This document shows positions 13,505 through 58,860 of a stretch of DNA of 64,000 nucleotides, piece by piece. The notes beneath the pieces are model-generated. The model was given only the letters and a program-made list of their open reading frames with translations. It ran no database searches and was not told the origin of the DNA. Each line of letters starts with the position of its first letter. Within the stretch, counting starts at the first letter, position 1. The position numbers and the translations under genes are program-made. Location: positions 248,001 to 312,000 of IMG/VR virus record IMGVR_UViG_3300023174_000033. The stretch is one strand, 5' to 3'.

Positions 13505-13786
13505 ATGTCCACGATTATTAAAGAACAACTAAGTACACAATTAGAGGAACTTTTGACTCAACCACATATGATCATTCTACATAATGATGATTACAATTCT
13601 TTTGATTTTGTAATCAACTCACTGATTGAAATCTGTGGACATGAATACGAACAGGCTTCTCAATGTGCCCATATCGTACATTTTACTGGTAAATGTGATA
13701 TTAAACGGGGTGACTTGGATTCATTGAAAAAAATGTATAATAAGTTGAAATCTCTTGGACTCTCCGTCACCTTGGAAATGATTTAA
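13505..13786 (+). CDS. clpS: ATP-dependent Clp protease adaptor ClpS
   Basis: IILHNDDYNSFDFVINSL...QASQCAHIVHFTGKCDIK signature. Confidence 0.9.
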   Translation: MSTIIKEQLSTQLEELLTQPHMIILHNDDYNSFDFVINSLIEICGHEYEQASQCAHIVHFTGKCDIKRGDLDSLKKMYNKLKSLGLSVTLEMI

Positions 13787-15930
13787 GATTTCCAAGGACT
13801 TTTGAATGTCTGATTTTCAACTATCCTAGCTGCCCTTCTCCTCCGATTTACTGACAATAAAGCGGAGTAGTCATTTCCTTCGGTATAATCTTTTCTATCT
13901 AAAATTTGATTATAATAAGATAATCTATGTCCCTCTAATTTAGTTCTCGCATAATCCTCAACCATTTCACGGAATTCGTATTTACTAAAAACACTTGACA
14001 TATTAACCAAAGTCATCACGGTGTCGTCGTGTCCGATATCAGCAGCATATCTGACATTTCCAGATGGGGTTATATGTTTAACAAATGTGGTGATTTCTCG
14101 TATATTATCTTCATTCGTAATCAAAATATTTTTTCTATCCATATTATCTTGATAATCTTTAACGAGCATATTCTTATTTTCACCAATTTTAAGTCCAATT
14201 TTTTCCTCTGGTGAGTCAACTCTGTGTTTATATCTGAAAAAAACATTTGACCCATAGTTATTATTACCTTCAAATAAACCTGGTAAATGAGCTAGAAATT
14301 CATTTCCATAGTTATTTAATTCCAATACAACTTTGAAATTTTCAGAGTTGAAATATTCAAATAATAAACAATAGAATACCTCTGCGAGTTGTTTTACCGA
14401 AACCAAATTATTTCTGTATACGGCAATTTGTTCTAAACAGAAAAAATCAGACAAATGTGTATAAGAATTTTTTTGCATCTCAACTAAATCCTCTGATTTT
14501 GGAACTATTTTGAAAACATTTATGATTGAATAGTCTTGTCCCAAACCTTCTGAAATATCAACCGACATTATTCCTTTGACAGTATTTCTATCAATCGGTG
14601 AAAAAACTGAATCATCATCAACCCATTTCAATTCATCATAGGGGAATTTTAATCTTCTGTCCAACTCCTCCAACTTTTCGTAAACATAATTTTTCTTATT
14701 TGAAAGTAATCCCTCAATTATATGTTCTGAAAGTAATGACCTTGTGGCATTGACAAACCTCAACCCATATTCTTGGTTGAAAGCGTCCTCACCACCGATA
14801 TCTTTGACCGCCTCCTCTTTCCAAGTAGTTACTTCTGCTACACTTTGTATTGGTATCTCTTCTCCACTTTCTTTTAATATCTTTATAGACTTTGCCTGAA
14901 TTTCACTGCAAGTTTCATTGTTATAAACACAGATAACATCTTTTACTATATCTGTATAAAATTTCATTTCAATTTTAGTGAATTTATTGAACTCATTATT
15001 TACTTGATCAAAAACACTTTCTTTTGTGAGTCCATGTTCATACATCTTGTGATTATTTAGTCGGTATAAAGTGACAAATCTTCCAGGCACTTGATACCAA
15101 TAAACCCTCATAGCTTTGTAGTTATTCTTTAATGGATCACCATCAGGCCTTTCCGCATCGGTTAAAAGTCTATGAAATAAATTCATCCCATTTGGTGTAG
15201 ACGTAATTACAATCTTGGAATTTTCCACCGCAGATACTACTGGAAATACCGCAGTATAGTATGGTTCAATTATGTTTGATGGTATGTGGGCAAATTCATC
15301 CAAATATAGAAAGTCAATCGTAAAACCAATTGCAGGTGTTTTACTTCTAGCGGCCGATTTTATTCTACAACCATTTTCAAATATTATGGTTCTTTGATTC
15401 CAGTTTTTCAAACCAGTTTTTAGAAAAAATGGAAGATTTTGATAAATTGCTTTTATCTTATCAATAATTTCAATAGTAGTACTAGCTATATTTGCTACAA
15501 TCATTATGTTTTTATCATTATTGAATGTGACATAATGTAACATCGCGATAGCTGCATTTATGGTTTTCCCTATCTGCCTTGACCCCATGAGTATTGAAAA
15601 TCTACTTGCGGTATATAAATCAAGTATCTTTTTCTGATAATCCCTTAATTTTATATTTTGTATTGAACCATCCTCTGTTTTGATTTTACAATATTTTTCG
15701 GCAAAGTAATGTATATCAAGTTTACATTTGATGTATTCTTGGATCTCATCTTGACTCATCATGAAAGTGATGCCAGACTTTCTCAACCCTACTTCACTTT
15801 GAAACCATGGGTTTTCAAATCTTTTGATTACAACACCATCATTTATCCTATCAGTAACATCTTCAATTAATGTGGAAGTGAATATGATTTTCCTTACTTC
15901 TTCCTCCTTTTTTGAGGCCATAGGGCTCAT
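13783..15930 (-). CDS. terL: Terminase large subunit (T4 gp17-like)
   Basis: LRDYQ, Walker A SRQIGKT, Walker B LYLDEFA, ITSTPNG, nuclease VDISEGLGQDYS and HDDTVM. Confidence 0.95.
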   Translation of the reverse strand: MSPMASKKEEEVRKIIFTSTLIEDVTDRINDGVVIKRFENPWFQSEVGLRKSGITFMMSQDEIQEYIKCKLDIHYFAEKYCKIKTEDGSIQNIKLRDYQKKILDLYTASRFSILMGSRQIGKTINAAIAMLHYVTFNNDKNIMIVANIASTTIEIIDKIKAIYQNLPFFLKTGLKNWNQRTIIFENGCRIKSAARSKTPAIGFTIDFLYLDEFAHIPSNIIEPYYTAVFPVVSAVENSKIVITSTPNGMNLFHRLLTDAERPDGDPLKNNYKAMRVYWYQVPGRFVTLYRLNNHKMYEHGLTKESVFDQVNNEFNKFTKIEMKFYTDIVKDVICVYNNETCSEIQAKSIKILKESGEEIPIQSVAEVTTWKEEAVKDIGGEDAFNQEYGLRFVNATRSLLSEHIIEGLLSNKKNYVYEKLEELDRRLKFPYDELKWVDDDSVFSPIDRNTVKGIMSVDISEGLGQDYSIINVFKIVPKSEDLVEMQKNSYTHLSDFFCLEQIAVYRNNLVSVKQLAEVFYCLLFEYFNSENFKVVLELNNYGNEFLAHLPGLFEGNNNYGSNVFFRYKHRVDSPEEKIGLKIGENKNMLVKDYQDNMDRKNILITNEDNIREITTFVKHITPSGNVRYAADIGHDDTVMTLVNMSSVFSKYEFREMVEDYARTKLEGHRLSYYNQILDRKDYTEGNDYSALLSVNRRRRAARIVENQTFKSPWKS

Positions 15931-21693: not shown

Positions 21694-21757
21694 AAAAATA
21701 ATGAGCAGAATTAAAAAATTAAAACCGAAATTTTCAAATAATATCTTCAATAAATTA

Positions 21758-21790
21758 TGAAAAAATTGGTTTTTAGTTTTAATATATAAA
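21758..21790 (+). promoter_or_regulatory. Late promoter of sheath copy 1 (TGAAAAA...AATATATA)
   Basis: atgaaaaaattggtttttagttttaatatataa, repeated identically upstream of sheath copy 2. Confidence 0.7.
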
Positions 21791-21814
21791 ATAAACAAAA
21801 AAAAATACATTACT

Positions 21815-24800
21815 ATGGCAGCAATTCAGATTGGAAAATATAGAAGACCTGGTATCTTTTTCGAGGAGTTCGACTTATCGATAATTCCACCACCACCGGC
21901 TCCAGCCCCCCTTGCGAGCTCGCTTGTGGTTGGATTCTCCAAAAAAGGACCGATAAACACTCCTATATTAATCTCTAACGTAGACGAATTAGAGAGAATT
22001 TACGGTCCTTTGGACAGAACATTAGAAAGAAAGGGTTCTTATTTTCACAGAACTATAGCAAAAATTCTCGAGACATCCCCGGTTCTCGCTATGAATCTTT
22101 TGCCCGCATCAGATACTTTGGATCAAATTGAATATAGATCTTTATCCACAGCAACTGACAAAACAAATAGTAGTGTGATAAATATCCCGCTTAGAAAAAT
22201 CCACGATACATCAAGTTTCTGGATTAGAGACAATGAGACATTCATTGATAATATTAAAGATGAAGTAGGTGGTGAACAAAGACTTTTCCACGTCACAAAT
22301 ATCTCCAATAGATATGTCAGTTTATTTATTTTCAAATCAAAAATGACTGGTTTTGATCAATCATTAGTGGAATATTATGGCACTGCTGATAAAGTTCCAC
22401 CTTATGTAAACCCATTAGATTATGGTTCAGATTACTTGGTTGATGTTTTAGCTGTTAGTGGTGATTGGTCCAATTATAGCAACTTATCAGTTGACGTTAA
22501 ATGGAGTGCTTACTTCAGTAGTGAAGGTTTGAAGAAGGATGCAATTAGAACATTTGCACAAGATAGAAATGTTAATACATTAGCTTTCTACGAGGGATGT
22601 TCTTTAATCCCTTATTTCAGAGATGGAAATGGTAAAAATGTATTCATTGAAACTGTAATTAATAATGACACAGATAAAACCGGTCTTTTCTGTGCGTTCA
22701 ATGCTGATAAGCTTGAAAACGCATATAGAAATGACATGGTTGATTTAAATGGTAATAACTTGGCAAAGAACAATTCTTTAGTTGATAATGAGCAAAATAG
22801 TATTGATTTCTTATCATATACCGCTCAAATTACAGAGAAGAATTTCTTCAATCTTACACCATTAGATAATGCGGATGGCATCCAAGCTGTAATGGCTATG
22901 GGACCATCAATTTCCGGAGCATTCAGTCCAAACTTAGCAACAACAGGGGCCGGTAAGAATGACTATCTTAGAACACTTGGTACACAATCAGATTATTATA
23001 ACTATACTCCAGAATTGAGAGGTCCTAGGACTGCTTACTTTTCAAATGAAATTATTAGGGGTGTAAGATCTGCGTCAGCTAGTTCAAACATAGGTGCTGG
23101 AGCACCTGTCGCTGGTAGTACCAGTTCTATATTTATTGGATTTGATATATCTAGAAAAGATAGTCTTCCACTTGGAACCACAACGTTTTCTGCACCTTAT
23201 TTTGTGGTAAATGGTTCCAAGACCCTTGTCAGTGGAGCGCCGGCAACGGGGCAATTTTCAACGGTGACTTTTTCTCATTTTCACTTAAATTACACCGGAT
23301 ATTCAACATCCGGTCCAACTTACACGGTCTTTTCAACATATTATTTAGATAGTACTGGTAATATTAGGGAAAAGGTATCTACTGAAAATTTGAGAACGCC
23401 AGAATTGTCAAATAATGACGTTGTTTTGGGATTCTTGAGATTTGATATAGGTCGTGGTGGTCTTGGTGGTGGTGTTGGTAGTGGTTACTTCACTAACTCA
23501 AGATGGGTGCCAGTTGGTGTTACCGGCATTAATGCGGGTGTTGCGGTAGCAGAAGTAGGTTTCACCAATTCATTTATTGACTTTACGGGTTCTGGTGTTG
23601 GTGTGGCCAGTCCGGTAACCGATTATGCTGTTAGCGAACCTTATGGTCCGAATAATGGAAAAATTCGTGTTACTTTCCTTTATACTGCTGGTTTTTCAAA
23701 CACCAACGGTGGTGACCTAGCAACTAGTTCAACTTCATTTACTGGTAGGTATAATCCATACACCGCTTACAGGAAAATTAGATGGTTCAATTATTTAGTG
23801 AATCTTTTATCTTCGGACGAGAAGAAAAAAATGGTTATGCTTTATGATAATAGTGATACGGTGGGTAATATCCTATCAGGTGTGCCTCATTTCCAAAAGT
23901 TATCTATGGCGAATGTGAAAATTTCAAATATAGAAACTTCTACTACCGTAGATAGATCTTTTGAATTAGATTTGGGTATCGGTTTCACACCAGGTTGGGT
24001 TCGTGGTGGAAACCTCATCTTTTATAAAGTTGATAATGAATTTTATATAGGATCGGATGGATATAACACTCAAATGAGACAGAGTACTGCAACAATGGGT
24101 GTGGCTGGTAAATATTCTGATCCATATTTGAAATTCATTGATGGTGGAATAAATACTGCAGATTATTTCTATAAAAACCTTTATTCATCAACATACTCAT
24201 CCGCTATTCAATCTCCGGTTCGTGTATTAGGTAATCACAGAGTAGTTCTAACGACAACTGTAAATAATGAACCAGTTGTGGTGTTCCAAGGACCATCTGG
24301 TGGTGGACAATTAAATGGTTATCCATTCGCTGTCGGCGGCACTGAATCATTCTATTTACCTGATTCACTATTAAATGATAAGGTATTTACTATTAGAACA
24401 GCTGCTACGAGTTCAATTTTGGATCCAATTACTGGAACTTTCTTTGTATTTGGTGGTGGGGTAAATGCGACATCATCAGCTTGGGTTCTTGATAAACCAA
24501 CTGTTTATGAAAATCTATATGGAGTTCAGAGGATTTTAAATGCAACTGATAGAGTTTATTTGAGAGGATATACAACTGGTGATGAATTACAAGTAGATTT
24601 TGAACAAGAAAATTTAACAACACCAAGTTCAGCTTCTGCGTCTAGGGATTATAGCCCTGTGATTATATCCGACCTAGGAAGTTTAAAACAAACTGTTGAA
24701 ATATACGAACCAACTGGATATGTTTCCGTTGATAATAAAGTATTAACTTTGAGCACAAGAGCTACTGGTGTTAAGAAAGGTGATTTCTTACAAGCTAAAG

Positions 24801-26029
24801 TAAATACTGACAATCTTTCAACTGGTGAAACTGGTAGGAGATTGACAAGAATCCTAGCTAAAAGAAGTTGGAGTGTAGATCCTACCTATACTGAAATTAC
24901 TTGTGATTCTTCAATACAAAAGTATTTGTTTGATAATGGAAAAATGCAAACATTAGCATACACAACCATTGATCAATATGTAGACGCATACCAGGCTATT
25001 AAATTGAAAGGATTCAAAATGAGAGACGAATCGGTACCTAATGGAACTGAGGAAACACAACAATCAATTTTAAACATGGTAGCTAAAGGAACACCTATTT
25101 TTAAAGCACTTGTAAATAAGGATTCAATTGATTTTAGATATGTAGTTGACTCTTTTGGTCTTGGTCTTATCGAGAACTCAAAACAACAACTTGTTGATAT
25201 AGTTGGAGAAAGATTGGATTGTTTCGGATTCATAAATATGCCATCTATTAGACAATTCAAAAATTCTGCTAATCCATCTTTCACAAATACTGATGGTACA
25301 ATTAGCACATCATATATCGCTAGTGGTGGTAATAGAGAAGCTAATCCTAAATTCTTATACTCTTTTGGCAAAGGTAAAGGTGTAAGTGCGGTTGGTTATT
25401 TCCTACCTTATCTAGTAGTAAATGATAATGGTAGACCAGCAGAATTACCACCAGCTATGTTCGTGGCCAATACATATCTAAAGAAGATTACTGGAGCTAA
25501 CCCAGCGGTATTACCTTGGACCATCGCAGCTGGTGTTACTAATGGTAGAATACTCAATATCAGAGGAGTTGAATCAAATTTCTCATTTGAAGATATTGAA
25601 AATCTAAATACAGCTCAAATGAATCCAATTGTATTCAAGAAAAATGGTGGATTTATAATTGAGACTGAAAACACAGCTCAAGTAATTTACAAATCAGCTC
25701 TTTCTTACATCCACGTAAGAGAAGTTCTAATTGAACTTGAGAGAGATTTAACCGCAATGTTACTTGACTATCAGTGGAGATTTAATACTCCTGAGGTTAG
25801 AGCTGAGATTAAATTAAAGGCTGACGCAATTTGTGAAAAGTATGTAAACAAAAATGGTCTTTACAATTACTTCAACAAGTGTGATGATGAGAATAATACT
25901 CCTGATTTAATTGATAGACAAATTGGTGTTATTGACACTTTTGTTGAACCAATCAAAGGTATGGGTATAATTGTAAATAATATTACAATTCTCAGAACTG
26001 GCTCTATTGAAGCTGGTGGATTTGCATAA
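21815..26029 (+). CDS. Tail sheath protein (gp18-like), copy 1
   Basis: RPGIFFEEFD, GFSKKGPINTP, AAGVTNG, SALSYIHVRE, CDDENNTPDLID, EPIKGM. Confidence 0.92.
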   Translation: MAAIQIGKYRRPGIFFEEFDLSIIPPPPAPAPLASSLVVGFSKKGPINTPILISNVDELERIYGPLDRTLERKGSYFHRTIAKILETSPVLAMNLLPASDTLDQIEYRSLSTATDKTNSSVINIPLRKIHDTSSFWIRDNETFIDNIKDEVGGEQRLFHVTNISNRYVSLFIFKSKMTGFDQSLVEYYGTADKVPPYVNPLDYGSDYLVDVLAVSGDWSNYSNLSVDVKWSAYFSSEGLKKDAIRTFAQDRNVNTLAFYEGCSLIPYFRDGNGKNVFIETVINNDTDKTGLFCAFNADKLENAYRNDMVDLNGNNLAKNNSLVDNEQNSIDFLSYTAQITEKNFFNLTPLDNADGIQAVMAMGPSISGAFSPNLATTGAGKNDYLRTLGTQSDYYNYTPELRGPRTAYFSNEIIRGVRSASASSNIGAGAPVAGSTSSIFIGFDISRKDSLPLGTTTFSAPYFVVNGSKTLVSGAPATGQFSTVTFSHFHLNYTGYSTSGPTYTVFSTYYLDSTGNIREKVSTENLRTPELSNNDVVLGFLRFDIGRGGLGGGVGSGYFTNSRWVPVGVTGINAGVAVAEVGFTNSFIDFTGSGVGVASPVTDYAVSEPYGPNNGKIRVTFLYTAGFSNTNGGDLATSSTSFTGRYNPYTAYRKIRWFNYLVNLLSSDEKKKMVMLYDNSDTVGNILSGVPHFQKLSMANVKISNIETSTTVDRSFELDLGIGFTPGWVRGGNLIFYKVDNEFYIGSDGYNTQMRQSTATMGVAGKYSDPYLKFIDGGINTADYFYKNLYSSTYSSAIQSPVRVLGNHRVVLTTTVNNEPVVVFQGPSGGGQLNGYPFAVGGTESFYLPDSLLNDKVFTIRTAATSSILDPITGTFFVFGGGVNATSSAWVLDKPTVYENLYGVQRILNATDRVYLRGYTTGDELQVDFEQENLTTPSSASASRDYSPVIISDLGSLKQTVEIYEPTGYVSVDNKVLTLSTRATGVKKGDFLQAKVNTDNLSTGETGRRLTRILAKRSWSVDPTYTEITCDSSIQKYLFDNGKMQTLAYTTIDQYVDAYQAIKLKGFKMRDESVPNGTEETQQSILNMVAKGTPIFKALVNKDSIDFRYVVDSFGLGLIENSKQQLVDIVGERLDCFGFINMPSIRQFKNSANPSFTNTDGTISTSYIASGGNREANPKFLYSFGKGKGVSAVGYFLPYLVVNDNGRPAELPPAMFVANTYLKKITGANPAVLPWTIAAGVTNGRILNIRGVESNFSFEDIENLNTAQMNPIVFKKNGGFIIETENTAQVIYKSALSYIHVREVLIELERDLTAMLLDYQWRFNTPEVRAEIKLKADAICEKYVNKNGLYNYFNKCDDENNTPDLIDRQIGVIDTFVEPIKGMGIIVNNITILRTGSIEAGGFA

Positions 26030-26048
26030 TAATCATAATCCCTAAATT

Positions 26049-26078
26049 AAAAAACCCTCAAGAAATTGAGGGTTTTTT
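26049..26078 (+). terminator. Intrinsic terminator
   Basis: aaaaaccctcaa-gaaa-ttgagggtttttt. Confidence 0.9.
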
Positions 26079-26124
26079 AATTAATAAATAAAATACATAA
26101 AATGAAACAAAAGACTAAAAAAAT

Positions 26125-26157
26125 ATGAAAAAATTGGTTTTTAGTTTTAATATATAA
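26125..26157 (+). promoter_or_regulatory. Late promoter of sheath copy 2
   Basis: Identical 33-nt block to 21758-21790. Confidence 0.7.
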
Positions 26158-26182
26158 GATAAACAAAAAAAAATAATTTACT

Positions 26183-29100
26183 ATGGCAGCAATTCAGATT
26201 GGAAAATATAGAAGACCAGGTATCTTTTTCGAAGAGTTTGATTTATCGATTATTCCACCGCCACCAGCGCCAGCTCCTTTAGCTAGCTCTTTGGTTGTTG
26301 GTTTTTCGAAAAAGGGACCTATCAACACCCCTATATTGATCTCTAACGTAGATGACTTGGAGAAAATTTATGGTCCTTTGGACAGAACATTAGAAAGAAA
26401 GGGTTCTTATTTTCATAGAACTATAGCTAAAATATTAGAAACTTCTCCAGTTTTAGCAATGAACCTATTACCGACCTCAGATGTACTTGATAAAGTACAA
26501 TATAGATCGTTATCTACGGCGACAGATAAAAAGAACTCAAGTGTAATTGAAATTCCTTTCAGGTATATTCATGATACATCAAGTTTCTGGACAAGAGATA
26601 ATGAAACTTTTATTGATAATGTAAAAAATGAGGTGGACGGATCAAGCAGATTATTTCACATAACAAATATTGGGAATAGATTCACTACAGTTTTTATATT
26701 CAAATCAAAATTAACTGGTTTTGATCAATCATTAGTTGAATATTATGGAACTGCTGATAAGACCCCTCCTTATGTAAATCCTTTAGATTTTGCATCTGAT
26801 TATATGGTTGATGTTTTAGCCGTTAGTGGGGATTGGTCAAATTATGAAGAGTTAGCTGTTGATATCAGATGGAGTGCATATTTTGACACCACTGGATTGA
26901 AAAAAACTGCTATACGTGAATTTGCAGCTGATAGAAATGTTAATACATTAGCTTTTTATGAAGGATGTTCACTCATCCCATATTTCACAAATTCTGATGG
27001 TAGAAATGTTTTCATTGAGACAATTATCAATAATGATACTGATAGAACTGGCCTTTTCTGTGCTTTCAATTCGGATAAATTGGAAAATGATTATAGAAAT
27101 GATATGGTTGATATTGTTGGCAACAACTTATCAAATAATAACACATTAATTGATAAAGATATCACTGAAGTTGATTTCCTTTCATATAAAGAAAGAATTA
27201 CAGAAGTAAATCCATTCAAACTTCAAACATTGGATGATGCAAATGGAATACAATCCGTTATGGTTATTGGTTCTGCATTTGCAGGTTTTATGCCAACTGC
27301 GGTGAATTTGACTGCGGGTTCATTCAGTAGAGAGGGGGCTTGGATTGGTCTAGGATTGTTTGGAACAAAGGTTAGATCACAAGACGAGTGGTATACATAT
27401 GGTGCTACAGGAACTAACTTCTTGATGCCATCTAGAACAACCTATAACGCAAATGAATTGATAAGGGGGGTTAGGTATAATCCTACTAGTACCTTATCTA
27501 TAATTTTGTCAGGAGCATTCACTTCTTCAACCACTGTTACTTTTCAAGTTGCTTCACAGTCATCTCAATTCTATGGTACACTAACCGCGTCCGATCCTTA
27601 TTTTGTTGTGAACGGTAAAAAGACTTACATAGAGGGTCCAACCTCATCACTTGGTACTTACTTCTTTGGAGTATCATTCTCAATTTCTCATAAAGATTAT
27701 TTACCAATCAGTGCTACCGCAACTTATCACACAGCTTTTCACTTGACTCCAGGTGAAGGTGTGATTAAGAAAACACAAGGGACCGAAGTTGGTATATTAC
27801 CAATTCTTCCTGATGAGGACGTTGTTTTGGGTTTTGCAACTTACAGAATGGCCGCTCTGGGTGGTGTTCAGTCTGGATACTTTGCGAATGATACCACAAA
27901 TTACCCACCATTCTACACGTCAGTGGGTATAACTGGTAGTACGACTACATTTGCTAGAACTTCACATGAATTTCTACCAGGTATTGACTATACTGTACAA
28001 GAAGTGACGGCAACTAGTTTCAGATTGACAATGTTGAATACTGCTGTTGTTGATGTTAATGGTGGTGGTACTGATTTTGGATTCTATACAAATATGTACT
28101 ATACCCACAGGAAGATTAGATGGTTTAATAGCCTTGTTTCTTTACTTGATTCCGAGGATAGAAAAAAAATGTGTATGTTAATTGATACAAACTATACTAA
28201 ATTATCCCTTGAAAACTCAGTAGTTTCTCAAATAAATAAATCAGAATCTTCAAATAAGAGTTTTGTTTTAGACGTTGGGGTTCCTTTAACCTCTTTTGTG
28301 AAAGAAGGAAACTTAGCATTCTATCAAATTGATAATGAATTTTTCAGTGGTTCAAGAGGGTTTGTTAGCTCAACTCAATCATCTTCACGTGGATCTGCAA
28401 AAGTGGGTGTGGCTGGTAGATATTCAGATGCTGTAATTGCTATTCAACAAGGTAACGTTTCAACAGGTGATTTCTTCTATCCAAACTTCACCACAGAATT
28501 GCAATCAACGAGGGTTACATTTGCAAAGAATTCATTAGGACAAAGTGTGGTTGTGTTCACTGGCACGGCGTCAGGTGCTCTAAATAACAATAGACCTTGG
28601 CCAACTTTTGGTGGCACTGAATCAGTATTTTTCCCTGATACCAAATTGAATTTTAAATCGTTCACGTTGGTGCAGACAAGTACCTATTCGGTAGTTGATC
28701 CATTGACTGGCACCGGATTCAATATAGCAAATACTGCTTCGTCCGTTTATATCGTAGATAAGGAAGTAGTATCGGAAGATTTAGGGTTCATTAATCAAAT
28801 AAATTCCACAACTGATAAATACTATTTGAGTATTGACCAAAAATCAACAGGAGAGTACAGTGTACAATATACATTACCAAATCTAATTGATGCGGTCACT
28901 GAGGTTGGTCTTAATGCAACTGCTAGCACAACCTTCTTACCAAGACAGTTCGCTCCACAAATTATTTCAGAACTTGGTAACTTAAAACAAACAGTAGAAA
29001 TTCAAGTTCCAACTGGGTACACATCAGTTGATAACAAAATATTAGTATTCGGAACTTCCTATCCTACAATAAAGGTTGGTGATTTCTTATTAGCTAAAGT

Positions 29101-30325
29101 TGATACTGATATGTTAGCAACAAATGAAACTGGCAGAAGACTAACTAGAATTTTGAATAAAAAAGCTTGGTCAGTTGATTCAACCTATATGGAAATAACC
29201 TGTGATTCGGCTATACAGAAGTTCACAATCCAAGATGGTATTCAGACTATTGCTTACACCACTATTGATTCCTACTCCTCAACATATAAAGCTTTAACAC
29301 TTAAAGGCTTCAGAATTAGAGAAGAATCATTACCAGATGGAACGGAGGAAACTCAACAAGAAATTTTGAATATGGTTGCAAAAGGTACTCCTTTATTCAA
29401 AGCATTGACTAATAAAGATTCAATTGATTTTAGATATGTAGTTGACTCCTTTGGTCTTGGATTGATTGAGGATTCCAAACAACAACTAGTTGATATAGTT
29501 GGTGATAGATTAGATTGTTTTGGTTTCATAAACATGCCGTCTATCAGACAATTTAAAAATTCCGCTAATCCATCTTTCACAAATACTGATGGAACTATCA
29601 ACACTGGATATATCGCAGCTGGTGGAAATGAAGAAGCTAACCCTAGGTTCTTATACTCTTTCGGTAAAGGTAAAGGTGTAAGTGCGGTTGGTTATTTCTT
29701 ACCTTATATGGTTGCTAATGACAACGGCAGACCAGCAGAATTACCACCAGCTATGTTTGCAGCTAGTACTTACTTGAGAAAACTGACTGGCGCTAATCCA
29801 GCGGTATTACCTTGGACCATCGCAGCTGGTGTTACTAATGGTAGAATTCAAAATGTACAGGGTGTAGAAACAAACTTCTCATTTGAAGATATTGAAAACC
29901 TCAACATGGCTCAAATGAACCCAATCGTGTTCAAAAAGAATAGAGGATTTGTAATTGAAACTGAAAATACAGCTCAAGTAATTTACAAATCAGCTCTTTC
30001 TTACATCCACGTTAGGGAAGTGCTCATTGAACTTGAGAGAGAATTAGCTACAATGTTATTATTCTATCAATGGAAATTCAACACTCCAGAAGTTAGAGCT
30101 GAAATCAAATTAAAAGCAGATGGTATCTGTGAAAAATATTTGAACAAGAATGGTCTCTATAACTACTTCAACAAGTGTGATGAGGAAAATAACACACCAG
30201 ATCTTATTGACAGACAAATTGGTGTAATTGACACATATGTTGAACCAATCAAAGGTATGGGAGTTATCGTAAATAACATTACGATATTGAGAACTGGAGC
30301 TATTGAAGCTGGTGGATTTGCTTAA
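26183..30325 (+). CDS. Tail sheath protein (gp18-like), copy 2
   Basis: Same motifs as copy 1; near-identical termini and diverged centre. Confidence 0.92.
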   Translation: MAAIQIGKYRRPGIFFEEFDLSIIPPPPAPAPLASSLVVGFSKKGPINTPILISNVDDLEKIYGPLDRTLERKGSYFHRTIAKILETSPVLAMNLLPTSDVLDKVQYRSLSTATDKKNSSVIEIPFRYIHDTSSFWTRDNETFIDNVKNEVDGSSRLFHITNIGNRFTTVFIFKSKLTGFDQSLVEYYGTADKTPPYVNPLDFASDYMVDVLAVSGDWSNYEELAVDIRWSAYFDTTGLKKTAIREFAADRNVNTLAFYEGCSLIPYFTNSDGRNVFIETIINNDTDRTGLFCAFNSDKLENDYRNDMVDIVGNNLSNNNTLIDKDITEVDFLSYKERITEVNPFKLQTLDDANGIQSVMVIGSAFAGFMPTAVNLTAGSFSREGAWIGLGLFGTKVRSQDEWYTYGATGTNFLMPSRTTYNANELIRGVRYNPTSTLSIILSGAFTSSTTVTFQVASQSSQFYGTLTASDPYFVVNGKKTYIEGPTSSLGTYFFGVSFSISHKDYLPISATATYHTAFHLTPGEGVIKKTQGTEVGILPILPDEDVVLGFATYRMAALGGVQSGYFANDTTNYPPFYTSVGITGSTTTFARTSHEFLPGIDYTVQEVTATSFRLTMLNTAVVDVNGGGTDFGFYTNMYYTHRKIRWFNSLVSLLDSEDRKKMCMLIDTNYTKLSLENSVVSQINKSESSNKSFVLDVGVPLTSFVKEGNLAFYQIDNEFFSGSRGFVSSTQSSSRGSAKVGVAGRYSDAVIAIQQGNVSTGDFFYPNFTTELQSTRVTFAKNSLGQSVVVFTGTASGALNNNRPWPTFGGTESVFFPDTKLNFKSFTLVQTSTYSVVDPLTGTGFNIANTASSVYIVDKEVVSEDLGFINQINSTTDKYYLSIDQKSTGEYSVQYTLPNLIDAVTEVGLNATASTTFLPRQFAPQIISELGNLKQTVEIQVPTGYTSVDNKILVFGTSYPTIKVGDFLLAKVDTDMLATNETGRRLTRILNKKAWSVDSTYMEITCDSAIQKFTIQDGIQTIAYTTIDSYSSTYKALTLKGFRIREESLPDGTEETQQEILNMVAKGTPLFKALTNKDSIDFRYVVDSFGLGLIEDSKQQLVDIVGDRLDCFGFINMPSIRQFKNSANPSFTNTDGTINTGYIAAGGNEEANPRFLYSFGKGKGVSAVGYFLPYMVANDNGRPAELPPAMFAASTYLRKLTGANPAVLPWTIAAGVTNGRIQNVQGVETNFSFEDIENLNMAQMNPIVFKKNRGFVIETENTAQVIYKSALSYIHVREVLIELERELATMLLFYQWKFNTPEVRAEIKLKADGICEKYLNKNGLYNYFNKCDEENNTPDLIDRQIGVIDTYVEPIKGMGVIVNNITILRTGAIEAGGFA

Positions 30326-30347
30326 TCACATCAAAAAAAATAAAAAG

Positions 30348-30378
30348 AAAAACCCTCAAGAAATTGAGGGTTTTTTTT
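30348..30378. terminator. Bidirectional intrinsic terminator
   Basis: Same hairpin as 26049-26078, between convergent genes. Confidence 0.9.
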
Positions 30379-31149: not shown

Positions 31150-34100
31150 ATGGATAAGAAACTATTAGATGCTCTCAATAATTTATCAATAGGGTTAGAG
31201 ATTCTATCCCAGGCTCTTGAAGATAACGGCAAGGAAATGAAATCCGCTGTTTCTCAAGCTTTAAAATCAATTGATTTGGACAAGAAATTCAAAACTCTCA
31301 GTAAAGGTATTGAGAGTTTGGCCGATGTATCTAAAAAGATTACAGACGGACAAAATACTACCTTAAAAATCCTAGAAGAACAATCCAAAAAAATAGCTGG
31401 ATTATCCAAATCAACGACCGGTGCTAAAGCAAAGATAACGAAAGTTAATCAGGGTCCAGAATTAGCACCTCTACCTGAACAAGAAATACCTCTTAAATAT
31501 GGTGAAGTTCCAACTTTACCAGAATTGGGGAAAATTGAAGAACAGATTATTCCCATAAAGTATGGTGAGTTGCCAACTCTTCCGGAATTAGGTAAAATCA
31601 AAGAACAAATCATTCCCCTAAAATATGGAAAGGCCCCTATATTTGTAAATTTATCAAAGATTAAAGAAACTTTAATTCCTTTAAAATATGGTAAAGTCCC
31701 TATTTTTATAAATTTAGAAAAAATAAAGGAAGCGATAATTCCTTTGAAATATGGATCCGTTCCAACTTTGCCAAAAATGGCCAAAATTGAGGAACAAATC
31801 ATACCACTTAAATATGGTGATATTCCTACTTTACCAGAGATGGCAAAGGTTGAAGAACAAATCATACCATTAGTATATGGAGAACTTCCCACTTTACCTA
31901 GTATTGCGGAACAAGTTATACAATTAAAGTATGGGGAACTCCCATCTTTACCTAGTATTGGTGAGCAAATTATACCACTTAAATATGGTGAAGTTCCTAC
32001 CTTGCCTAAAATGGGTGAAATTGAGGAACAAATTATACCACTTAAATATGGTGAGGTTCCTACATTGCGAGATTTAGCAAAAGTTGAAGATCAGATCATA
32101 CCTCTTAAATATGGCGAAGTTCCGACATTGCCTGAAATGGCAAAGATTATTGAGCAAATTATACCGTTAAAGTATGGTGAGGTTCCTACCTTACCAGAGA
32201 TGGCCAAGATTAGTGAACAAATTATACCACTCAAATATGGCGAAGTTCCTACCTTACCAGAGATGGCAAAGGTTGAAGAGCAAATCATACCGTTAAAGTA
32301 TGGTGAGGTTCCTACCTTACCAGAGATGGCCAAGATTGGAGATCAGATCATACCATTAAAGTATGGAGATGTTCCTACCTTGCCTAAAATGGGCGAAATT
32401 GAGGAACAAATTATACCTCTTAAATATGGTGAGGTTCCTACCTTGCCTAAAATGGGCGAAATTGAGGAACAAATTATACCTCTTAAATATGGTGAGGTTC
32501 CTACCTTACCAGAGATGGCCAAGATTGGAGATCAGATCATACCATTAAAGTATGGAGATGTTCCTACCTTACCAGAGATGGCCAAGATTGGTGAGCAAGT
32601 TATACCATTAAAGTATGGTGAGGCTCCTACCTTACCAGAGATGGCCAAGATTAGTGAACAAATTATACCACTCAAATATGGAGATGTTCCTACCTTACCA
32701 GAGATGGCCAAGATTGGAGATCAGATCATACCATTAAAGTATGGAGATGTTCCTACCTTACCAGAAATGGCCAAGATTAGTGAACAAATTATACCGTTAA
32801 AGTATGGTGAGTTACCAACCTTACCAGAGATGGCAAAGGTTGAAGAGCAGATCATACCTCTTAAATGTGGTGAGGCTCCTACCTTACCAGAGATGGCCAA
32901 GATTGGTGAGCAAGTTATACCATTAAAGTATGGTGAGGCTCCTACCTTACCAGAGATGGCAAAGGTTGAAGAGCAGATCATACCATTAAAGTATGGCGAT
33001 GTTCCTACCTTACCAGAAATGGTCAAGATTAGTCAACAAATTATACCACTTAAATATGGTGAGTTACCAACCTTACCAGAAATGGCCAAGATTAGTGAAC
33101 AAATTATACCGTTAAAGTATGGTGAGGTTCCGACTTTGCCTGAAATGGCAAAGGTTGAAGAGCAGATCATACCATTAAAGTATGGTGAGTTACCAACCTT
33201 ACCAGAGATGGCAAAGATTGGTGATCAAATTATACCGTTAAAGTATGGTGATGTTCCGACGTTGCCAGAATTGGGTAAAATTGATTCTCAAGAAATTCCA
33301 TTATCTTATGGGAAATTGCCTGAATTGCCTAAGGTTGGTAAGGTTGATTCAATAGAACTGCCTGTTAAATATGGTAAGATGCCAGATTTACCGAAAATGG
33401 CAAAAATGAAACCAATTGAATTACCAGTAAAATGGGGTAAAATTCCAAAATTGCCACAGCTACCAAAGATATCGGCTCAAGAAATTGCATTAAAATATGA
33501 AAAAGTAAAACCATTTACACCACCAACTCCAAAAAAGGTTATCATACCAACTGAGTATGAACAGCCTAAAAATAAAGTGACGGCACCTCCTAAACAAACT
33601 GTTAAAGGACAAGCCGAATCACCAATGGATCCAAAGAAAAATAAAGGAATTAAAGAAGGTATTGGTTTAATACTATTGATGGCAGTAGCTATTGTAGCTC
33701 TTGGATTGGCATTTAAAGTAATTGGAGGTGTGAATATAGGAACTGTATTAGCTTTATCAGTTGCTATACCAATATTAGCTTTAGCATTTGCGAAAGTATC
33801 TGAATATAAAAGTCTTACTTTAAAACGAGCACTTGAATTAACGGGTGTCATGGTCGCAATTGCAACTGCAGTATTGTTATCTTCATTTATATTGTCGGCG
33901 GTGGCTCCGGTGGGCGGTGCTCAAATTCTTACCACATTGTCAATTGCTTTGATGTTTACCGTGATAGGATTTGGATTGCAACAACTCATTAATTCAGTTC
34001 AAGGATTAGGTCCGAAAGCTATGAGGAATGTATTCTTGCTTCCAATAATAATGCCAGCATTATCATTGGCAATTTTATTATCTTCATTTATACTTTCAAT

Positions 34101-37100
34101 GGTTCAACCGGTCGGTATGGTACAATTATTCTCGGCGATAGCAATTGCTGGAGTGTTCTATGTATTATCACTTGGTATTGAAAAATTAGTTGAAGGAGTT
34201 TCTAAAATAGGAGCAGGTTCTTTAGTAGCTCTGGCTATTATGCCGTTAGTATTAGCAGCATTGTCCTTTTCTATAATGTTATCATCTTATTTCTTAAGTG
34301 CAGTTGCTCCGGTTGGTATAGTTCAATTATTTACAGCTATAGGCATAGCCGCTGTATTTACTGTACTTTCCTATGGATTAAAAAATCTAATGGAGGGTAT
34401 TTCTTCAGTGGGTATAAAATCTTTGTTATTCTTACCATTCTTACCACTAATAATGGTGACATTATCACTTGCGATTGCTATGTCTAGCTATGTGTTGGGT
34501 GCGGTAAAACCAGTTGGTATCTTACAATTATTTACCGCAATATTGATTGCTGGTGTATTCTCTGTACTCGCTTATGGGTTGAATAAAATGATTTCTGCCT
34601 TGAAGGGTGTGAATCCAGCAACGGCAGCTGTAATTGCGGTCGCATTGCCAATATTACTTGTTGCGATTTCATTTGCGATAATGGCTTCTTCTTACGCATT
34701 TGCCGCTATTAAACCTATCGGATTGACACAATTCTTAACCGCATTAGCAATATCCATAATATTCATACCAATTTCATTTGCATTACCTTACATTTCAAAG
34801 GCAATTCAAAATATTAGTATTGGTAGGATAGTTTTATTACCAGTTATAATGGTCGCAATGGCGGTAGCTATTTGGTTGTCTTCGGAAATATTTGCAAAAG
34901 TAACACCTATTCCATTAGCAACATTATTTAATGTTGTAATGATCGCGATTACAATGGCGCTCGTCACACTAATACTTGGTTTTACTGCGAAATTAATTAA
35001 TAGTATTTCAATAAAGACTTTCCTGAAAGGAGCTCTCGCTATGGTTATAATCGCAACCACTATAATGACAACCTCTTTAATTCTCGCAAAGGGAGAATAC
35101 ACGAAGTATCCTTCAATTGGTTGGTTAATTGGTTCACTCTTAGGAGTTGCTGGATTCGGTATTGTGATGTTCCTACTTGACAAAGTTGGATTAAATCCAG
35201 CAAAAGTTATAACCGGAGCTATAGCGATAGTAGCAATAGCAGGTGCTATATATGTATCTTCACTTATTTTATCAAAAGGTAATTATACGAAGTATCCTAC
35301 AATTGATTGGGCAATAGGAGTTGCCGCTTCTATGATTCCGTTTGGAATAGCCTCTGTAATATTGGGAGCGATTGCGACATCAGGAGTTGGGGCATTAGCA
35401 ATTGCCGCTGGACTTGTTGCTATAATAGCTATAGCCGGAACTATCATAGCAGTTGATAAAATACTTTCAATTGGTTCGTATGGTAAATACCCAACTTTAC
35501 CTTGGGTGAAAGGAGTTGGCGCGAGTCTATTAGCATTTGGAGTTGCCACAGTTGGACTTGGTACTTTCATAGTTGGTACAATAGGAATAGGAGCTTTGGC
35601 ATTGGCTGCTGGTAAGGACGCTGTATTGGGTATTGCACAAAATATAGTAGATGCGGCAGAAATTCTATCAAAAGGTAATTTCACTGGTGGTCCAAAGAAA
35701 GAATGGGCCGAAGGTGTGGCTATTGCCCTTGGTGCATTTTCCCCAATATACTCTATGTTAGCTAAAGGTGGAATAATGAAACTTTTCACTGGTGGTCCAA
35801 GTCCTCAAGAATTTGGACAAGCAATAGTTGCAATCTGTGATAGTATTAATATAGCTGCAGAAAGATTATCCAAAGGTAAATTTATAGGGGGTCCTACAAA
35901 AGCTTGGTCGGAAGGAGTAGGACTGGGAATTGGGGCATTTGCTTCTGTTTACAAAATGTTACTCGCTAACTCCATAATGAAGATGTTTGGAGGTGGTGGT
36001 ATTGGGCCAAAAGATTTTGCAAGTGCTATTCAAGCTATATCTGCTGGATTGCTCGTTGCTGGTGAGTCCTTGTCAAAGGGCACCTTCACCGGTGGACCTA
36101 CGAAAGAATGGTCAGAAGGAGTGGCCGCTGGTATTGGTGGGTTTAGTCAAGTTTATAATATGCTTATGGCAAATGCCATAATGAAGATGTTTGGAGGTGG
36201 TGGTATTGGACCTAAAGATTTTGGAAAAGCAATTCAAGCCATATCACAAGGACTTCTAATTTCTTCGGAAATTCTAGCAAAAGGTACCTTTACGGGTGGA
36301 CCTACTAAAAAATGGTCAGAGGGGGTAGCAGCTGGCATTGGCGGGTTCAGTCAAGTATATAGCATGTTGATGTCAAATGCCATAATGAAGATGTTCGGAG
36401 GTGGTGGAATTGGACCTAAAGATTTCTCAAAAGCAGTTGAGGCAATTTCCAAAGGATTGATGGTCGCATCATTAAATTTGGCTAAAGGTAATTTCACAGG
36501 TGGTCCATCAAAAAATTGGGCAGAAGGTGTGTCCGCTAGTATTGGGGCATTCAGCAAAGTTTATAATATGTTAATTTCTAGCTCCATAATGAAAATGTTT
36601 GGAGGTGGTGGTATTAGTCCACAAGATTTTGGTAAAGCTATTGAATCAATAAGTAAGGGACTCACTAAGGCTGGTGATATTTTAAGTAAAGGTAAATTTA
36701 CTGGTGGCCCATCTGTTAGTTGGGCACTTGGTGTGAGAGAAGGTATCGGAGCATTCAGTAGCGTCTATGCTATGTTGATTAGTAGTGGTATCCCTAAAAT
36801 GTTTGGAGGTGGGTTTGGACCAAAAGATTTCGCGACGGCTATAGAAACTATGTCCGAGGCACTTAAGAAAAGTGGTAATATACTTTCAAAAGGTAAGTTT
36901 TCTGGTGGTCCAACATTAGCTTGGGCCATGGGTGTTTCCCAAGCTATCGGTGGATTCAGCAAAGTCTATGATATGATGGTGATGAATAAGGTAGCATCTA
37001 TGTTCGGAGGTGGTGGACTAGGACCTATTGAATTTGCTAAAGCGGTTGAATCTGTTTCTAAATCTTTGAATTTAGCTGGTGAACTATTAAGTGGTGGTAA

Positions 37101-41980: not shown

Positions 41981-42008
41981 AAAACCCCTCTTTTGAGGGG
42001 TTTTTTTT
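41981..42008. terminator. Bidirectional intrinsic terminator
   Basis: aaaacccctc-tttt-gaggggtttttttt between convergent genes. Confidence 0.85.
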
Positions 42009-58242: not shown

Positions 58243-58860
58243 ATGCCATTACCTCATTTTACCCAACTCCAGATGACCGGTTCGCCAGGTTTACCAGGTA
58301 GTTTACCAGAAGAACCAGTATACCTCAACTTGTTTGAGATTACTTTCGTTCTACCAACGATTCTACAAGCACAAGGCAGAGATCCTGTTTTGATGTTACA
58401 ACAAGCAAACTCTGTTGGATTGGATTTAACACCAGCAATCGAGACTGCTGAACAGAAATTCAAGTATTCAACCAGAGCATTCATGAAGACTCCTACAAAA
58501 ACTCACGTAGACTTCAATATCAAATTCAACGTGAACGTTACCGACCAAGGTCAAATGACCGTTTGGAACACATTAAAGGCTTGGTACGATGTTGTATGGA
58601 ATTCTCAGAATGGTACAGTTGGATATAAGAGTGATATCATCGGTTCTGTTATCGTTAATCAACACGATAAGAAGGGTGTTGTCCTAAGAAGAGTTACTTT
58701 CAACTCTGTTCAAATCAAACAAGTTTCAGCAGTTGAATTAGCTTGGAACTCAAATGAAATTTTAAGTGATGTTCAGGCTGATTTCGTAGCAGATTACTGG
58801 ATTGATGAGTACATTGATGGAAACTTCACTATTACTCCTCCACTTATTTCTGGATATTAA
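58243..58860 (+). CDS. Tail tube protein (T4 gp19-like)
   Basis: NLFEITF, LKAWYD, GYKSD, VNQHDKKGVVLRRVTF, ELAW, FVADYW. Confidence 0.8.
   Translation: MPLPHFTQLQMTGSPGLPGSLPEEPVYLNLFEITFVLPTILQAQGRDPVLMLQQANSVGLDLTPAIETAEQKFKYSTRAFMKTPTKTHVDFNIKFNVNVTDQGQMTVWNTLKAWYDVVWNSQNGTVGYKSDIIGSVIVNQHDKKGVVLRRVTFNSVQIKQVSAVELAWNSNEILSDVQADFVADYWIDEYIDGNFTITPPLISGY

What the first reader, a model, noticed from the sequence alone, without database searches (positions are those of the whole stretch)
21758..30378. Entire tail-sheath transcription unit duplicated in tandem, with conserved cores and diverged central inserts
Seen: two intact sheath genes (1404 and 1380 aa) 4368 nt apart, each with an identical 33-nt promoter block and an identical terminator hairpin. 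The first ~340 aa and last ~450 aa are highly similar, while the central ~600 aa (about 22850-24660 versus 27220-28960) match only in short islands (YFVVNG, DVVLGF, RKIRWFN, DNEF, GGTES). Identical DNA patches (e.g. about 48 nt ccagcggtattaccttggaccatcgcagctggtgttactaatggtagaat near 25502 and 29798) sit among synonymous differences. Known: T4 gp18 is single-copy and about 660 aa, and sheath inserts face outward. Inference: two co-expressed, co-polymerisable subunits display different surface domains (mosaic sheath, or two tail types), with gene conversion keeping the lattice compatible.
Basis: partly seen in the sequence, partly recalled or inferred. Interest (0 to 1): 0.75.

Follow-up and report, generated by a model that had tools for sequence, protein, structure and literature searches.

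The report
Tandem duplicated tail-sheath genes, megaphage
A 465-kb freshwater megaphage carries two complete, side-by-side tail-sheath genes, kept in at least three related phages, that share an almost identical polymerising core but differ strongly in a large central insert; a real but not unprecedented sheath-gene duplication.

Summary
ORFs 21815-26029 (1404 aa) and 26183-30325 (1380 aa) are intact tail-sheath genes. Each follows a near-identical 94-nt promoter/leader block and ends at an identical 29-nt terminator hairpin. Amino-acid identity is 81% at the N end, 40% in the middle and 90% at the C end.

It is not an assembly artefact. Both copies have equal depth in three independent lake metagenomes. 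Two diverged relatives from other assemblies carry the same tandem pair.

About 80 other relatives have one sheath gene in the same conserved gene order, so the duplication is specific to this lineage. Both copies are under purifying selection (dN/dS 0.02-0.10). The middle diverged about twice as much, relative to the ends, as in orthologue pairs.

The identical DNA patches alone do not prove gene conversion, because orthologues in different phages show them too. Three-genome comparisons do show short conversion tracts in the C-terminal core and the 3' UTR.

The tail-tube candidate is single-copy, so co-assembly of both paralogues into one sheath is the most likely mechanism. This is inferred, not shown.

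Two sheath paralogues are already known in phage PaBG, in Alexandravirus and in PVC/AFP injection systems. This is a new member of a known kind, of moderate interest.

The parts
21756..21814 (+). Promoter-like block and A-rich leader of sheath copy 1. It contains the genome-wide core TAATATATAA at 21780-21789.
   Evidence: The 94 nt from 21756 to 21849 match 26124-26217 with 3 mismatches. The core motif occurs 52 times in the 464.6-kb genome against about 19 expected, nearly always 3-30 nt before an ATG. A similar block lies upstream of the single sheath gene in relatives.
21815..26029 (+). Tail-sheath paralogue 1 (1404 aa): conserved N part 1-340, variable insert about 341-960, conserved C-terminal sheath core about 1069-1404.
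   Evidence: phrog_34521 E 6e-101. In the AF2 model, protein residues 1069-1404 align to solved sheaths such as KP1 at Z 9.2, phi-kp24, A-1(L), TssC and phiKZ. Orthologues in L086 and L087 give dN/dS 0.02-0.08 in the C part.
26050..26078 (+). Intrinsic terminator hairpin of copy 1.
   Evidence: -21.1 kcal/mol, z -7.3. The hairpin is identical in all six gene copies of three genomes. Relatives keep a hairpin at this position with compensatory changes.
26079..26123 (+). Unique spacer between the two units.
   Evidence: It has no similarity to the sequence upstream of copy 1. An exact 467-nt contig in run X1 covers 25687-26153, so it crosses the spacer. The spacer is largely conserved in L086 and L087.
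26124..26182 (+). Promoter-like block and leader of sheath copy 2.
   Evidence: It is 1-2 nt different in relatives L086 and L087.
26183..30325 (+). Tail-sheath paralogue 2 (1380 aa), with the same layout as copy 1. The insert model is mostly beta strands with one long helical hairpin.
   Evidence: phrog_34521 E 1e-98. Orthologues P0003 and P0004 are 80% and 74% identical in the insert. dN/dS against L087 is 0.04 (N), 0.10 (middle) and 0.02 (C). AF2 model of residues 330-1000: pLDDT 76, pTM 0.74.
30348..30376 (+). Intrinsic terminator hairpin of copy 2.
   Evidence: -18.8 kcal/mol, z -6.4. The 29 nt are identical to 26050-26078.
25475..25543 (+). Candidate gene-conversion tract in the C-terminal core (codons about 1223-1243). 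It contains the 50-nt identical patch at 25502-25551; the partner lies at about 29771-29839.
   Evidence: A run of 6 consecutive within-genome-pattern sites with no orthology-pattern site, P = 0.001.
58243..58860 (+). Tail-tube candidate (205 aa), single copy in the genome. It is context for the mechanism, not part of the duplication.
   Evidence: phrog_45 tail tube E 6.5e-7 and phrog_32623 E 9e-16. It is the only match in the 464.6-kb genome at E<=0.01.

Best explanation
What is shown: a lineage-specific tandem duplication of the complete tail-sheath transcription unit (promoter-like block, leader, gene, terminator) in a 465-kb freshwater megaphage related to the Mahaphage/Lak group, whose predicted hosts are Bacteroidota. 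The ancestor had one sheath gene between the same neighbouring genes. The duplicate pair predates the split of at least three sampled lineages. Both copies have been kept under purifying selection. The N-terminal arm and the C-terminal sheath core stay almost identical between the copies. This comes from strong constraint plus short gene-conversion tracts in the C-terminal core and 3' UTR. The roughly 620-aa central insert has diverged about twice as much, relative to the ends, as it does between orthologues.

What is inferred: both genes are transcribed together late in infection from near-identical promoters and leaders, in roughly equal amounts. Both proteins polymerise on the single tail tube into one heteromeric contractile sheath that shows two different outer surfaces. 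The order may be layered, as with Pvc2/Pvc3 in PVC particles, or irregular.

The confidence of 0.6 is for the whole statement. The shown, evolutionary part I rate at about 0.9 and the inferred co-assembly at about 0.55.
For: Real and tandem:
- Word depth of copy 1 versus copy 2 is 47.5 vs 47.9, 5.9 vs 6.6-6.8 and about 5.5 vs 5.3 in three runs from three studies. An exact contig crosses the spacer.
- The same tandem pair is found in a JGI contig (L086) and an ENA contig (L087). Their copy-1 orthologue parts are 85.5% and 97.9% identical to P0001. Their copy-2 orthologues are 74% and 80% identical in the insert.

Lineage-specific:
- None of 82 related loci has a second copy within 10 kb.
- L005, L006 and L047 have the same flanking genes around one sheath gene.
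- The two copies are sisters in the N, middle and C trees, with support 99-100.

Both functional:
- Both ORFs are intact.
- Orthologue dN/dS is 0.02-0.10 for copy 2. For copy 1 only the C part could be measured, at 0.02-0.08.
- The promoter block and terminator are conserved.

Insert divergence: the middle/N path ratio is 6.6 for the paralogues, against 2.4-4.7 for orthologue pairs.

Conversion:
- Within-genome site patterns cluster at codons 1089-1128 and 1205-1243, P = 0.001.
- In L086 the 3' UTRs of the two copies differ at 1 of about 24 nt, yet both are unlike the window's copy 1.
- Synonymous divergence in the C core is 0.54-0.55 between paralogues. That is no higher than between W and L086 orthologues, at 0.47-0.62.

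Co-assembly:
- Residues 1-57 are identical and the C-terminal 324 aa are 90% identical.
- This C part is the conserved sheath fold.
- The tube candidate is single-copy.

Precedents:
- PaBG has two sheath paralogues, both found in virions.
- PVC particles have alternating Pvc2/Pvc3 layers.
Against: - No expression or virion data exist. One 168-nt contig from an RNA library lies on copy 2 only, and no RNA run was listed for the copy-1 insert.
- Co-polymerisation was not tested.
- 21 copy-specific fixed differences lie in the C core, split 7/10 as derived in copy 1/copy 2. They could mean each copy prefers its own kind or a particular position in the tail.
- Synonymous sites are close to saturation, so relative ages of the regions are uncertain.
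- The insert fold could not be assigned, so its orientation and function rest on analogy.
Confidence: 0.6

Rival explanations
1. Position-specific specialisation. One paralogue builds the bulk of the sheath. The other forms a special zone, such as the baseplate-proximal initiator rings or the neck-proximal rings, as Pvc4 does in PVC particles.
For: Pvc4 is a paralogous sheath initiator in PVC. 21 copy-specific fixed substitutions in the C core are conserved across three genomes.
Against: The promoter, leader and first 12 codons are near-identical, and gene dosage is equal. That suggests similar amounts, not a few rings against hundreds of subunits. Divergence is symmetrical: neither copy stays closer to the single-copy outgroups.
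Confidence: 0.17
2. Two tail types. Each virion uses only one paralogue, so a burst contains two kinds of particle with different sheath surfaces (bet-hedging).
For: The strongly diverged inserts and the copy-specific core substitutions could favour self-sorting.
Against: There is a single tube candidate. The N-terminal arms are identical and the core is 90% identical, which leaves little basis for exclusion. The regulatory blocks are identical.
Confidence: 0.1
3. One copy is not a virion sheath subunit. It is a redundant duplicate on its way to loss, or it has been recruited to another role.
For: No direct expression or virion evidence exists for either copy.
Against: Both frames are intact. 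The pair is retained in three diverged lineages. dN/dS is 0.02-0.10 in every region that could be measured; the copy-1 insert could not be, because synonymous sites are saturated there. Each copy keeps its own conserved promoter block and terminator.
Confidence: 0.06
4. Assembly artefact. Two strain alleles were joined in tandem, or a repeat was wrongly expanded.
For: Metagenomic assemblies can misjoin repeats. Logan contigs break at the shared identical tracts.
Against: Depth is 1:1 in three runs from three studies, and an exact contig crosses the unique spacer. Two independent assemblies of diverged relatives show the same arrangement. The apparent back-joints are cross-mapping of parts of each copy that lay outside the laid stretch.
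Confidence: 0.02

Closest known systems
Pseudomonas jumbo phage PaBG (proposed 'Lupandier' group), tail-sheath proteins gp76 and gp213 (PMC7412058)
   Same: Two sheath paralogues arose by a lineage-specific gene duplication in a jumbo myovirus. Both PaBG proteins are in the virion proteome, which is the outcome I infer here.
   Different: The PaBG genes are dispersed, about 58 kDa each, and 38% identical throughout. Here the genes are adjacent, about 1400 aa, and share regulatory blocks. Divergence is concentrated in a central insert, with 81-90% identity at the ends, and there are conversion tracts.
Alexandravirus (Erwinia phage Alexandra, Dickeya phage AD1), two distinct tail-sheath proteins (PMC9686651)
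   Same: Jumbo myoviruses reported to encode two sheath proteins.
   Different: I have only the one-line statement. The arrangement and similarity of those genes were not examined here. The hosts are Enterobacterales, not Bacteroidota-type.
Photorhabdus virulence cassette sheath Pvc2/Pvc3/Pvc4, and AFP Afp2/3/4 (PMC12546770)
   Same: Paralogous sheath subunits with a common fold and conserved strand-exchange handshakes co-assemble on one tube. Pvc2 and Pvc3 alternate in layers and differ by a surface knob. This is a working model for a two-surface sheath.
   Different: It is a bacterial extracellular injection system, with small subunits of about 350-450 aa. The extra Pvc3 domain is a known fibre dock. 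Here both paralogues carry homologous inserts of about 620 aa and unknown function.
Huge 'Mahaphage' genomes of Al-Shayeb et al. 2020 (LR745206, LR756500-LR756504; PMC7162821)
   Same: They are the closest deposited phage records: 43-44% identity over the full sheath length, with sheaths of 1248-1285 aa. LR756504 also has a second sheath paralogue, a 1221-aa frame 42% identical in the C part.
   Different: Their second copy, where present, lies 200 kb away and is much more diverged. At the syntenic place there is one gene. The paper does not mention sheath proteins at all.
T4 gp18 and other solved phage sheaths (KP1, phiKZ, phi-kp24, A-1(L))
   Same: The C-terminal 336 aa share the conserved sheath fold (Z 8.0-9.2).
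   Different: They are single-copy and about 500-690 aa. The proteins here are twice as long, with a large extra N region and insert.

Membership tests
Contractile tail sheath protein (T4 gp18 / Phage_sheath superfamily) | Sequence match to sheath profiles | tested here: met
   phrog_34521 at E 6e-101 and 1e-98, and phrog_23 at E about 1e-16, for both copies. The Pfam Phage_sheath_1C and Phage_sheath_1 hits are below the curated cut-off. tblastn hits annotated tail sheaths of Flavobacterium, Tenacibaculum and T4-like phages.
Contractile tail sheath protein (T4 gp18 / Phage_sheath superfamily) | Conserved C-terminal sheath fold | tested here: met
   In the AF2 model of P0001:205-1404, residues 865-1200 align to KP1 sheath (Z 9.2), phi-kp24 (8.6), AlgoCIS (8.5), A-1(L) (8.5), TssC (8.4) and phiKZ (8.0) over 230-249 residues. 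Model confidence in this part is low to moderate, so the support is moderate.
Contractile tail sheath protein (T4 gp18 / Phage_sheath superfamily) | Genomic context of a contractile tail (tube and other tail genes) | tested here: met
   A tail-tube candidate lies at 58243-58860 (phrog_45, E 6.5e-7). A protein with a tail-spike-like part lies at 48751-56130. Most neighbouring genes have no family match.
Contractile tail sheath protein (T4 gp18 / Phage_sheath superfamily) | Polymerises round the tube and contracts | not testable with these tools
   This needs virions, by cryo-EM or negative stain.
Phages and injection systems with two co-assembling sheath paralogues (PaBG, PVC/AFP type) | Two or more intact sheath paralogues in one genome, arisen by duplication | tested here: met
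   The two copies are sisters in all three region trees. Related phages have a single copy at the same place.
Phages and injection systems with two co-assembling sheath paralogues (PaBG, PVC/AFP type) | Both paralogues maintained by selection | tested here: met
   Orthologue dN/dS is 0.02-0.10 for copy 2 over its whole length, and 0.02-0.08 for the C part of copy 1. The pair is retained in three lineages.
Phages and injection systems with two co-assembling sheath paralogues (PaBG, PVC/AFP type) | Both proteins present in the same particle | not testable with these tools
   There are no virions or proteomes. Complex prediction was not run, because a pass between cores that are 90% identical would not have changed my odds.
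Phages and injection systems with two co-assembling sheath paralogues (PaBG, PVC/AFP type) | Both genes expressed | tested here: inconclusive
   Only one 168-nt contig from an RNA library, on 26308-26472. No RNA run was listed for the copy-1 insert.
Concerted evolution (gene conversion) between tandem paralogues | Segments where paralogues within a genome are more alike than orthologues between genomes | tested here: met
   Quartet sites overall are 204 orthology, 41 within-genome and 31 crossed. Local windows reverse this: 3:7 at codons 1089-1128 and 1:6 at 1209-1248. The run of 6 has P = 0.001. The 3' UTR of L086 is homogenised between its two copies. The N-terminal end could not be tested, because the copy-1 5' parts of both relatives are off their contigs.

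The most novel reading that the evidence does not exclude
The two paralogues assemble in a fixed pattern, such as alternating rings, into one very large sheath. Its two outer surfaces would have different jobs, for example docking folded tail fibres on one and binding host or environmental glycans on the other. Short gene-conversion tracts would keep the lattice-forming core interchangeable while the inserts are free to diverge. This would be the first heteromeric sheath lattice described in a true phage of the megaphage group.
Probability: 0.2. Interest if true: 0.7.

Novelty: new member of a known kind. Interest (0 to 1): 0.45.

Why it matters
Sheath proteins are usually treated as single-copy parts of a homopolymer. 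This case is naturally well controlled: two paralogues have near-identical regulatory regions, an identical N-terminal arm and a 90% identical C-terminal core, but inserts only 40% identical, and three lineages have kept both. That makes it a good system for two questions. How much surface variation does a contractile lattice tolerate? What are the large sheath inserts of megaphages for? It also gives a worked example of how to separate real gene conversion from nucleotide-level conservation in a highly expressed structural gene. The practical limit is that the phage is uncultivated, so the mechanism cannot be tested until an isolate or recombinant assemblies exist.

Tried and rejected
1. Identical tracts and same-codon excess as proof of conversion: rejected as sufficient evidence. 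Orthologue pairs from different phages show tracts of 47-50 nt (win1-L006, L005-L047). They also show same-codon fractions of 0.54-0.67 in the C core, against 0.65 for the paralogues.

2. dN/dS between the two copies: synonymous sites are near saturation (pS 0.54-0.72), so the ratio is unreliable. Orthologue comparisons were used instead.

3. Fold assignment of the insert. Foldseek of the 671-aa insert model against PDB and AlphaFold clusters gave only TM below 0.15, with vague multi-beta-sandwich look-alikes. Whole-model searches recovered only the sheath core. Pfam found nothing in the insert.

4. Search for copy-1 insert relatives: the search for homologous proteins returned nothing, not even the query itself. 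The metagenome scan returned only the window's own contig. The 5' halves of copy 1 in L086 and L087 therefore remain unknown, and conversion at the 5' end could not be tested.

5. Expression: one small contig from an RNA library, and no RNA run listed for the copy-1 insert. This says nothing either way.

6. Recombination by insert swapping from another phage: not supported. The inserts of the two copies are sisters, with support 99.

7. Apparent 'goes back' joints: they are explained by cross-mapping. Contigs that run beyond the laid stretch carry parts of one copy that align to the other copy. They are not chimeric alleles.

8. Complex prediction was not used. With cores 90% identical, neither a pass nor a fail would have moved the odds.

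9. Neighbouring genes: most gave no PHROG match.


Full report
**Observation.** The window is bases 248001-312000 of a 464,605-bp virus record judged 98% complete. Two + strand ORFs, 21815-26029 (1404 aa, P0001) and 26183-30325 (1380 aa, P0002), lie 4368 nt apart. Both match tail-sheath families: phrog_34521 at E 6e-101 and 1e-98, and phrog_23 at about 1e-16. The Pfam sheath hits are weak and below cut-off.

BLASTP aligns the two proteins end to end at 61% identity. Identity is 81% over residues 1-340, 40% over 341-960, 64% over 961-1080 and 90% over the last 324 residues. The middle is homologous throughout, not only in islands.

Upstream, 94 nt (21756-21849 against 26124-26217) differ at 3 positions, and the similarity ends abruptly at 21755. 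Downstream, a 29-nt hairpin plus T-run is identical at 26050 and 30348. It folds at -21.1 and -18.8 kcal/mol, z -7.3 and -6.4. The longest identical coding tract is 50 nt at 25502/29798.

**Is it real DNA?** Words from the junction occur in many independent freshwater metagenomes. In Logan contigs of three runs from three studies, the unique insert of copy 1 and that of copy 2 have the same depth: 47.5 vs 47.9, 5.9 vs 6.6-6.8, and about 5.5 vs 5.3. An exact 467-nt contig runs from the 3' end of copy 1 through the terminator and unique spacer into the promoter block of copy 2. The contigs break where the copies share 31-mers, as a de Bruijn assembler would. The listed back-joints are cross-mapping of parts of each copy that lay outside the laid stretch. 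A merge of two strains is excluded.

**Relatives.** The nearest deposited phage records are the 634-735-kb 'uncultured phage' genomes LR745206 and LR756500-LR756504, at 43-44% identity over the whole sheath. Next come jumbo phages of Flavobacterium, Tenacibaculum, Chryseobacterium and Prevotella (Lak), at about 29%. Al-Shayeb et al. 2020 place the genomes above 634 kb in the Mahaphage clade with predicted Bacteroidetes hosts, and never mention sheath proteins (PMC7162821).

IMG/VR holds 80 related loci. Their sheaths are 1200-1457 aa, so the great length is a clade trait, not a peculiarity of this genome. None of 82 related loci has a second sheath copy within 10 kb. The closest ones (L005, L006, L047) have the same neighbours in the same order around a single sheath gene. 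Upstream of that single gene lies a similar promoter-like block and A-rich leader. Downstream lies a hairpin terminator with compensatory changes. The core of the block, TAATATATAA, occurs 52 times in this genome, nearly always 3-30 nt before an ATG. It is probably a general promoter element of the phage; this is an inference.

**Age and retention.** Trees of the N, middle and C parts all place the two copies as sisters (support 99-100), inside a clade with L005, L006, L047 and L044. A search with the insert of copy 2 found two proteins, 80% and 74% identical in the insert. Their contigs come from an ENA assembly (L087) and a JGI assembly (L086). Each carries, directly upstream, the 3' part of a copy-1 orthologue, 97.9% identical over 339 aa and 85.5% over 677 aa. 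Each also has the same terminator, spacer and promoter block, and the same downstream genes. The duplication therefore predates the split of three lineages, and both copies have been kept.

Between orthologues, dN/dS for copy 2 is 0.04 (N), 0.10 (insert) and 0.02 (C). For the C part of copy 1 it is 0.02-0.08. Both genes are under purifying selection. For copy 2 this includes the divergent insert. For the copy-1 insert, synonymous sites are saturated and no ratio could be computed.

**What diverged.** The insert evolves fast in the whole family: L005-L047 is 82/46/86% identical in the N, middle and C parts. The paralogues still stand out. Their middle/N path-length ratio is 6.6 and their middle/C ratio is 5.8. 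Fourteen orthologue pairs give 2.4-4.7 and 2.1-4.0. Either the insert diverged faster after the duplication, or the ends were homogenised, or both.

The divergence is symmetrical. Of 21 copy-specific fixed differences in the C core, 7 keep the outgroup state in copy 1 and 10 keep it in copy 2.

An AF2 model of the copy-2 insert (pLDDT 76, pTM 0.74) is mainly beta strands with one long helical hairpin. It has no convincing structural neighbour. In the model of P0001:205-1404, the C-terminal 336 residues align with solved sheaths at Z 8.0-9.2. In solved sheaths the conserved C-terminal domain and the terminal arms form the inner, lattice-forming layer, and inserted domains lie outside. This is established knowledge of T4 gp18, pyocin and T6SS sheaths, not tested here.

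**Gene conversion.** Orthologues from different phages also share tracts of 47-50 nt. They also show same-codon fractions of 0.54-0.67 in the C core, against 0.65 for the paralogues and 0.47 expected at saturation.

The three-genome comparison is a valid test. Among quartet-informative sites for the window and L086, 204 support orthology, 41 the within-genome pattern and 31 the crossed pattern. The within-genome sites cluster. Codons 1089-1128 have 3 orthology sites against 7 within-genome sites. Codons 1209-1248 have 1 against 6. A run of six lies at codons 1223-1243 (P = 0.001 by shuffling) and holds the 50-nt patch.

In L086, the stretch from about 20 nt before the stop codon to the terminator is nearly identical between its two copies (1 difference in about 24 nt of UTR), and unlike the window's copy 1. 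In L087, the copy-1 UTR begins like the copy-2 type. Synonymous divergence in the C core is no greater between paralogues (0.54-0.55) than between window and L086 orthologues (0.47-0.62), although the duplication is older.

Short conversion tracts in the 3' third are therefore supported. The 5' end could not be tested, because the relatives' contigs end inside copy 1.

**Mechanism.** Shown:
- Two intact, selected sheath genes.
- Near-identical promoter, leader and start region, with identical terminators.
- Identical first 57 residues and a 90% identical core.
- A tube candidate (58243-58860; phrog_45, E 6.5e-7) that has no second copy in the genome.

Inferred: both are made together in similar amounts and polymerise on the same tube into one sheath with two kinds of outer surface. 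Precedents make this plausible. PaBG has two sheath paralogues, both found in virions (PMC7412058). PVC particles alternate layers of Pvc2 and Pvc3, which differ by a surface knob that docks fibres, and start with the paralogue Pvc4 (PMC12546770).

The rivals are position-specific use, two particle types, a non-structural or decaying copy, and an assembly artefact. I rate them 0.17, 0.10, 0.06 and 0.02.

**Novelty.** Sheath duplication is known in PaBG and in Alexandravirus (PMC9686651). I also found a dispersed second sheath gene in LR756504. This case adds a tandem form that keeps the whole transcription unit, divergence confined to the insert, and conversion tracts, in an uncultivated megaphage lineage. 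I file it as a new member of a known kind, interest 0.45.

Noticed in passing
whole genome G000; in the window e.g. 2008, 10822, 12491(-), 17428(-), 18365, 21780, 26148, 48037(-), 56403, 60093(-): The 10-mer TAATATATAA occurs 52 times in the 464.6-kb genome (about 19 expected from base composition), usually after a T-rich run and 3-30 nt before an ATG. It is probably the phage's own promoter element, with very short A-rich leaders and no Shine-Dalgarno sequence, as is typical of Bacteroidota-type hosts.
   Followed up: partly
window 31150-40401 (+), 42007-48006 (-), 48751-56130 (+): Three giant ORFs of 3083, 1999 and 2459 aa flank the sheath module. The first has higher G+C (0.38-0.42) and strong GC skew. 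It varies greatly in length among relatives and is missing in L058. The third has a tail-spike-like part (phrog_4636, E 3e-16). Their functions are unknown.
   Followed up: partly
L086 2192-2341 and L087 1177-1326 against window 26183-26332: The first 50 codons of copy 2 are 97-99% identical in DNA among the three phages, while the rest of the gene is 79-84% identical. This suggests either recent exchange between phages or strong nucleotide-level constraint on the translation start region. Copy 1 in the window differs from copy 2 by 16% over the same codons.
   Followed up: no
G000:C1 61999-69194 (-), 412152-413898 (-), 369801-378074 (+); all outside the window: The genome has other tandem paralogue sets: three ORFs of 770-827 aa, three of 141-149 aa, and a 2227-aa ORF followed by a related 525-aa ORF. 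A dispersed family of about 6 members of 330-650 aa is also present. The sheath pair is the most similar full-length pair among the large proteins.
   Followed up: no
LR756504.1 366430-367590 (-), locus L091: A second, dispersed sheath paralogue (1221-aa open frame, 42% identical to the C part of P0001) lies in a 636-kb huge phage, 200 kb from its main sheath gene. LR756501 has only a 226-aa fragment with an in-frame TAG (L092).
   Followed up: partly
window 13783-15930 (-) and 56937-58064 (-): A large terminase subunit (phrog_5989, E 7e-43) and an SbcD-like nuclease (phrog_100, E 4e-58) lie in the window. The sheath module is therefore embedded among packaging and DNA-metabolism genes rather than in a compact tail operon.
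   Followed up: no
window 24973-25371 (-) and 29353-29604 (-): Antisense ORFs of 132 and 83 aa lie inside the sheath genes. They are most likely chance frames.
   Followed up: no
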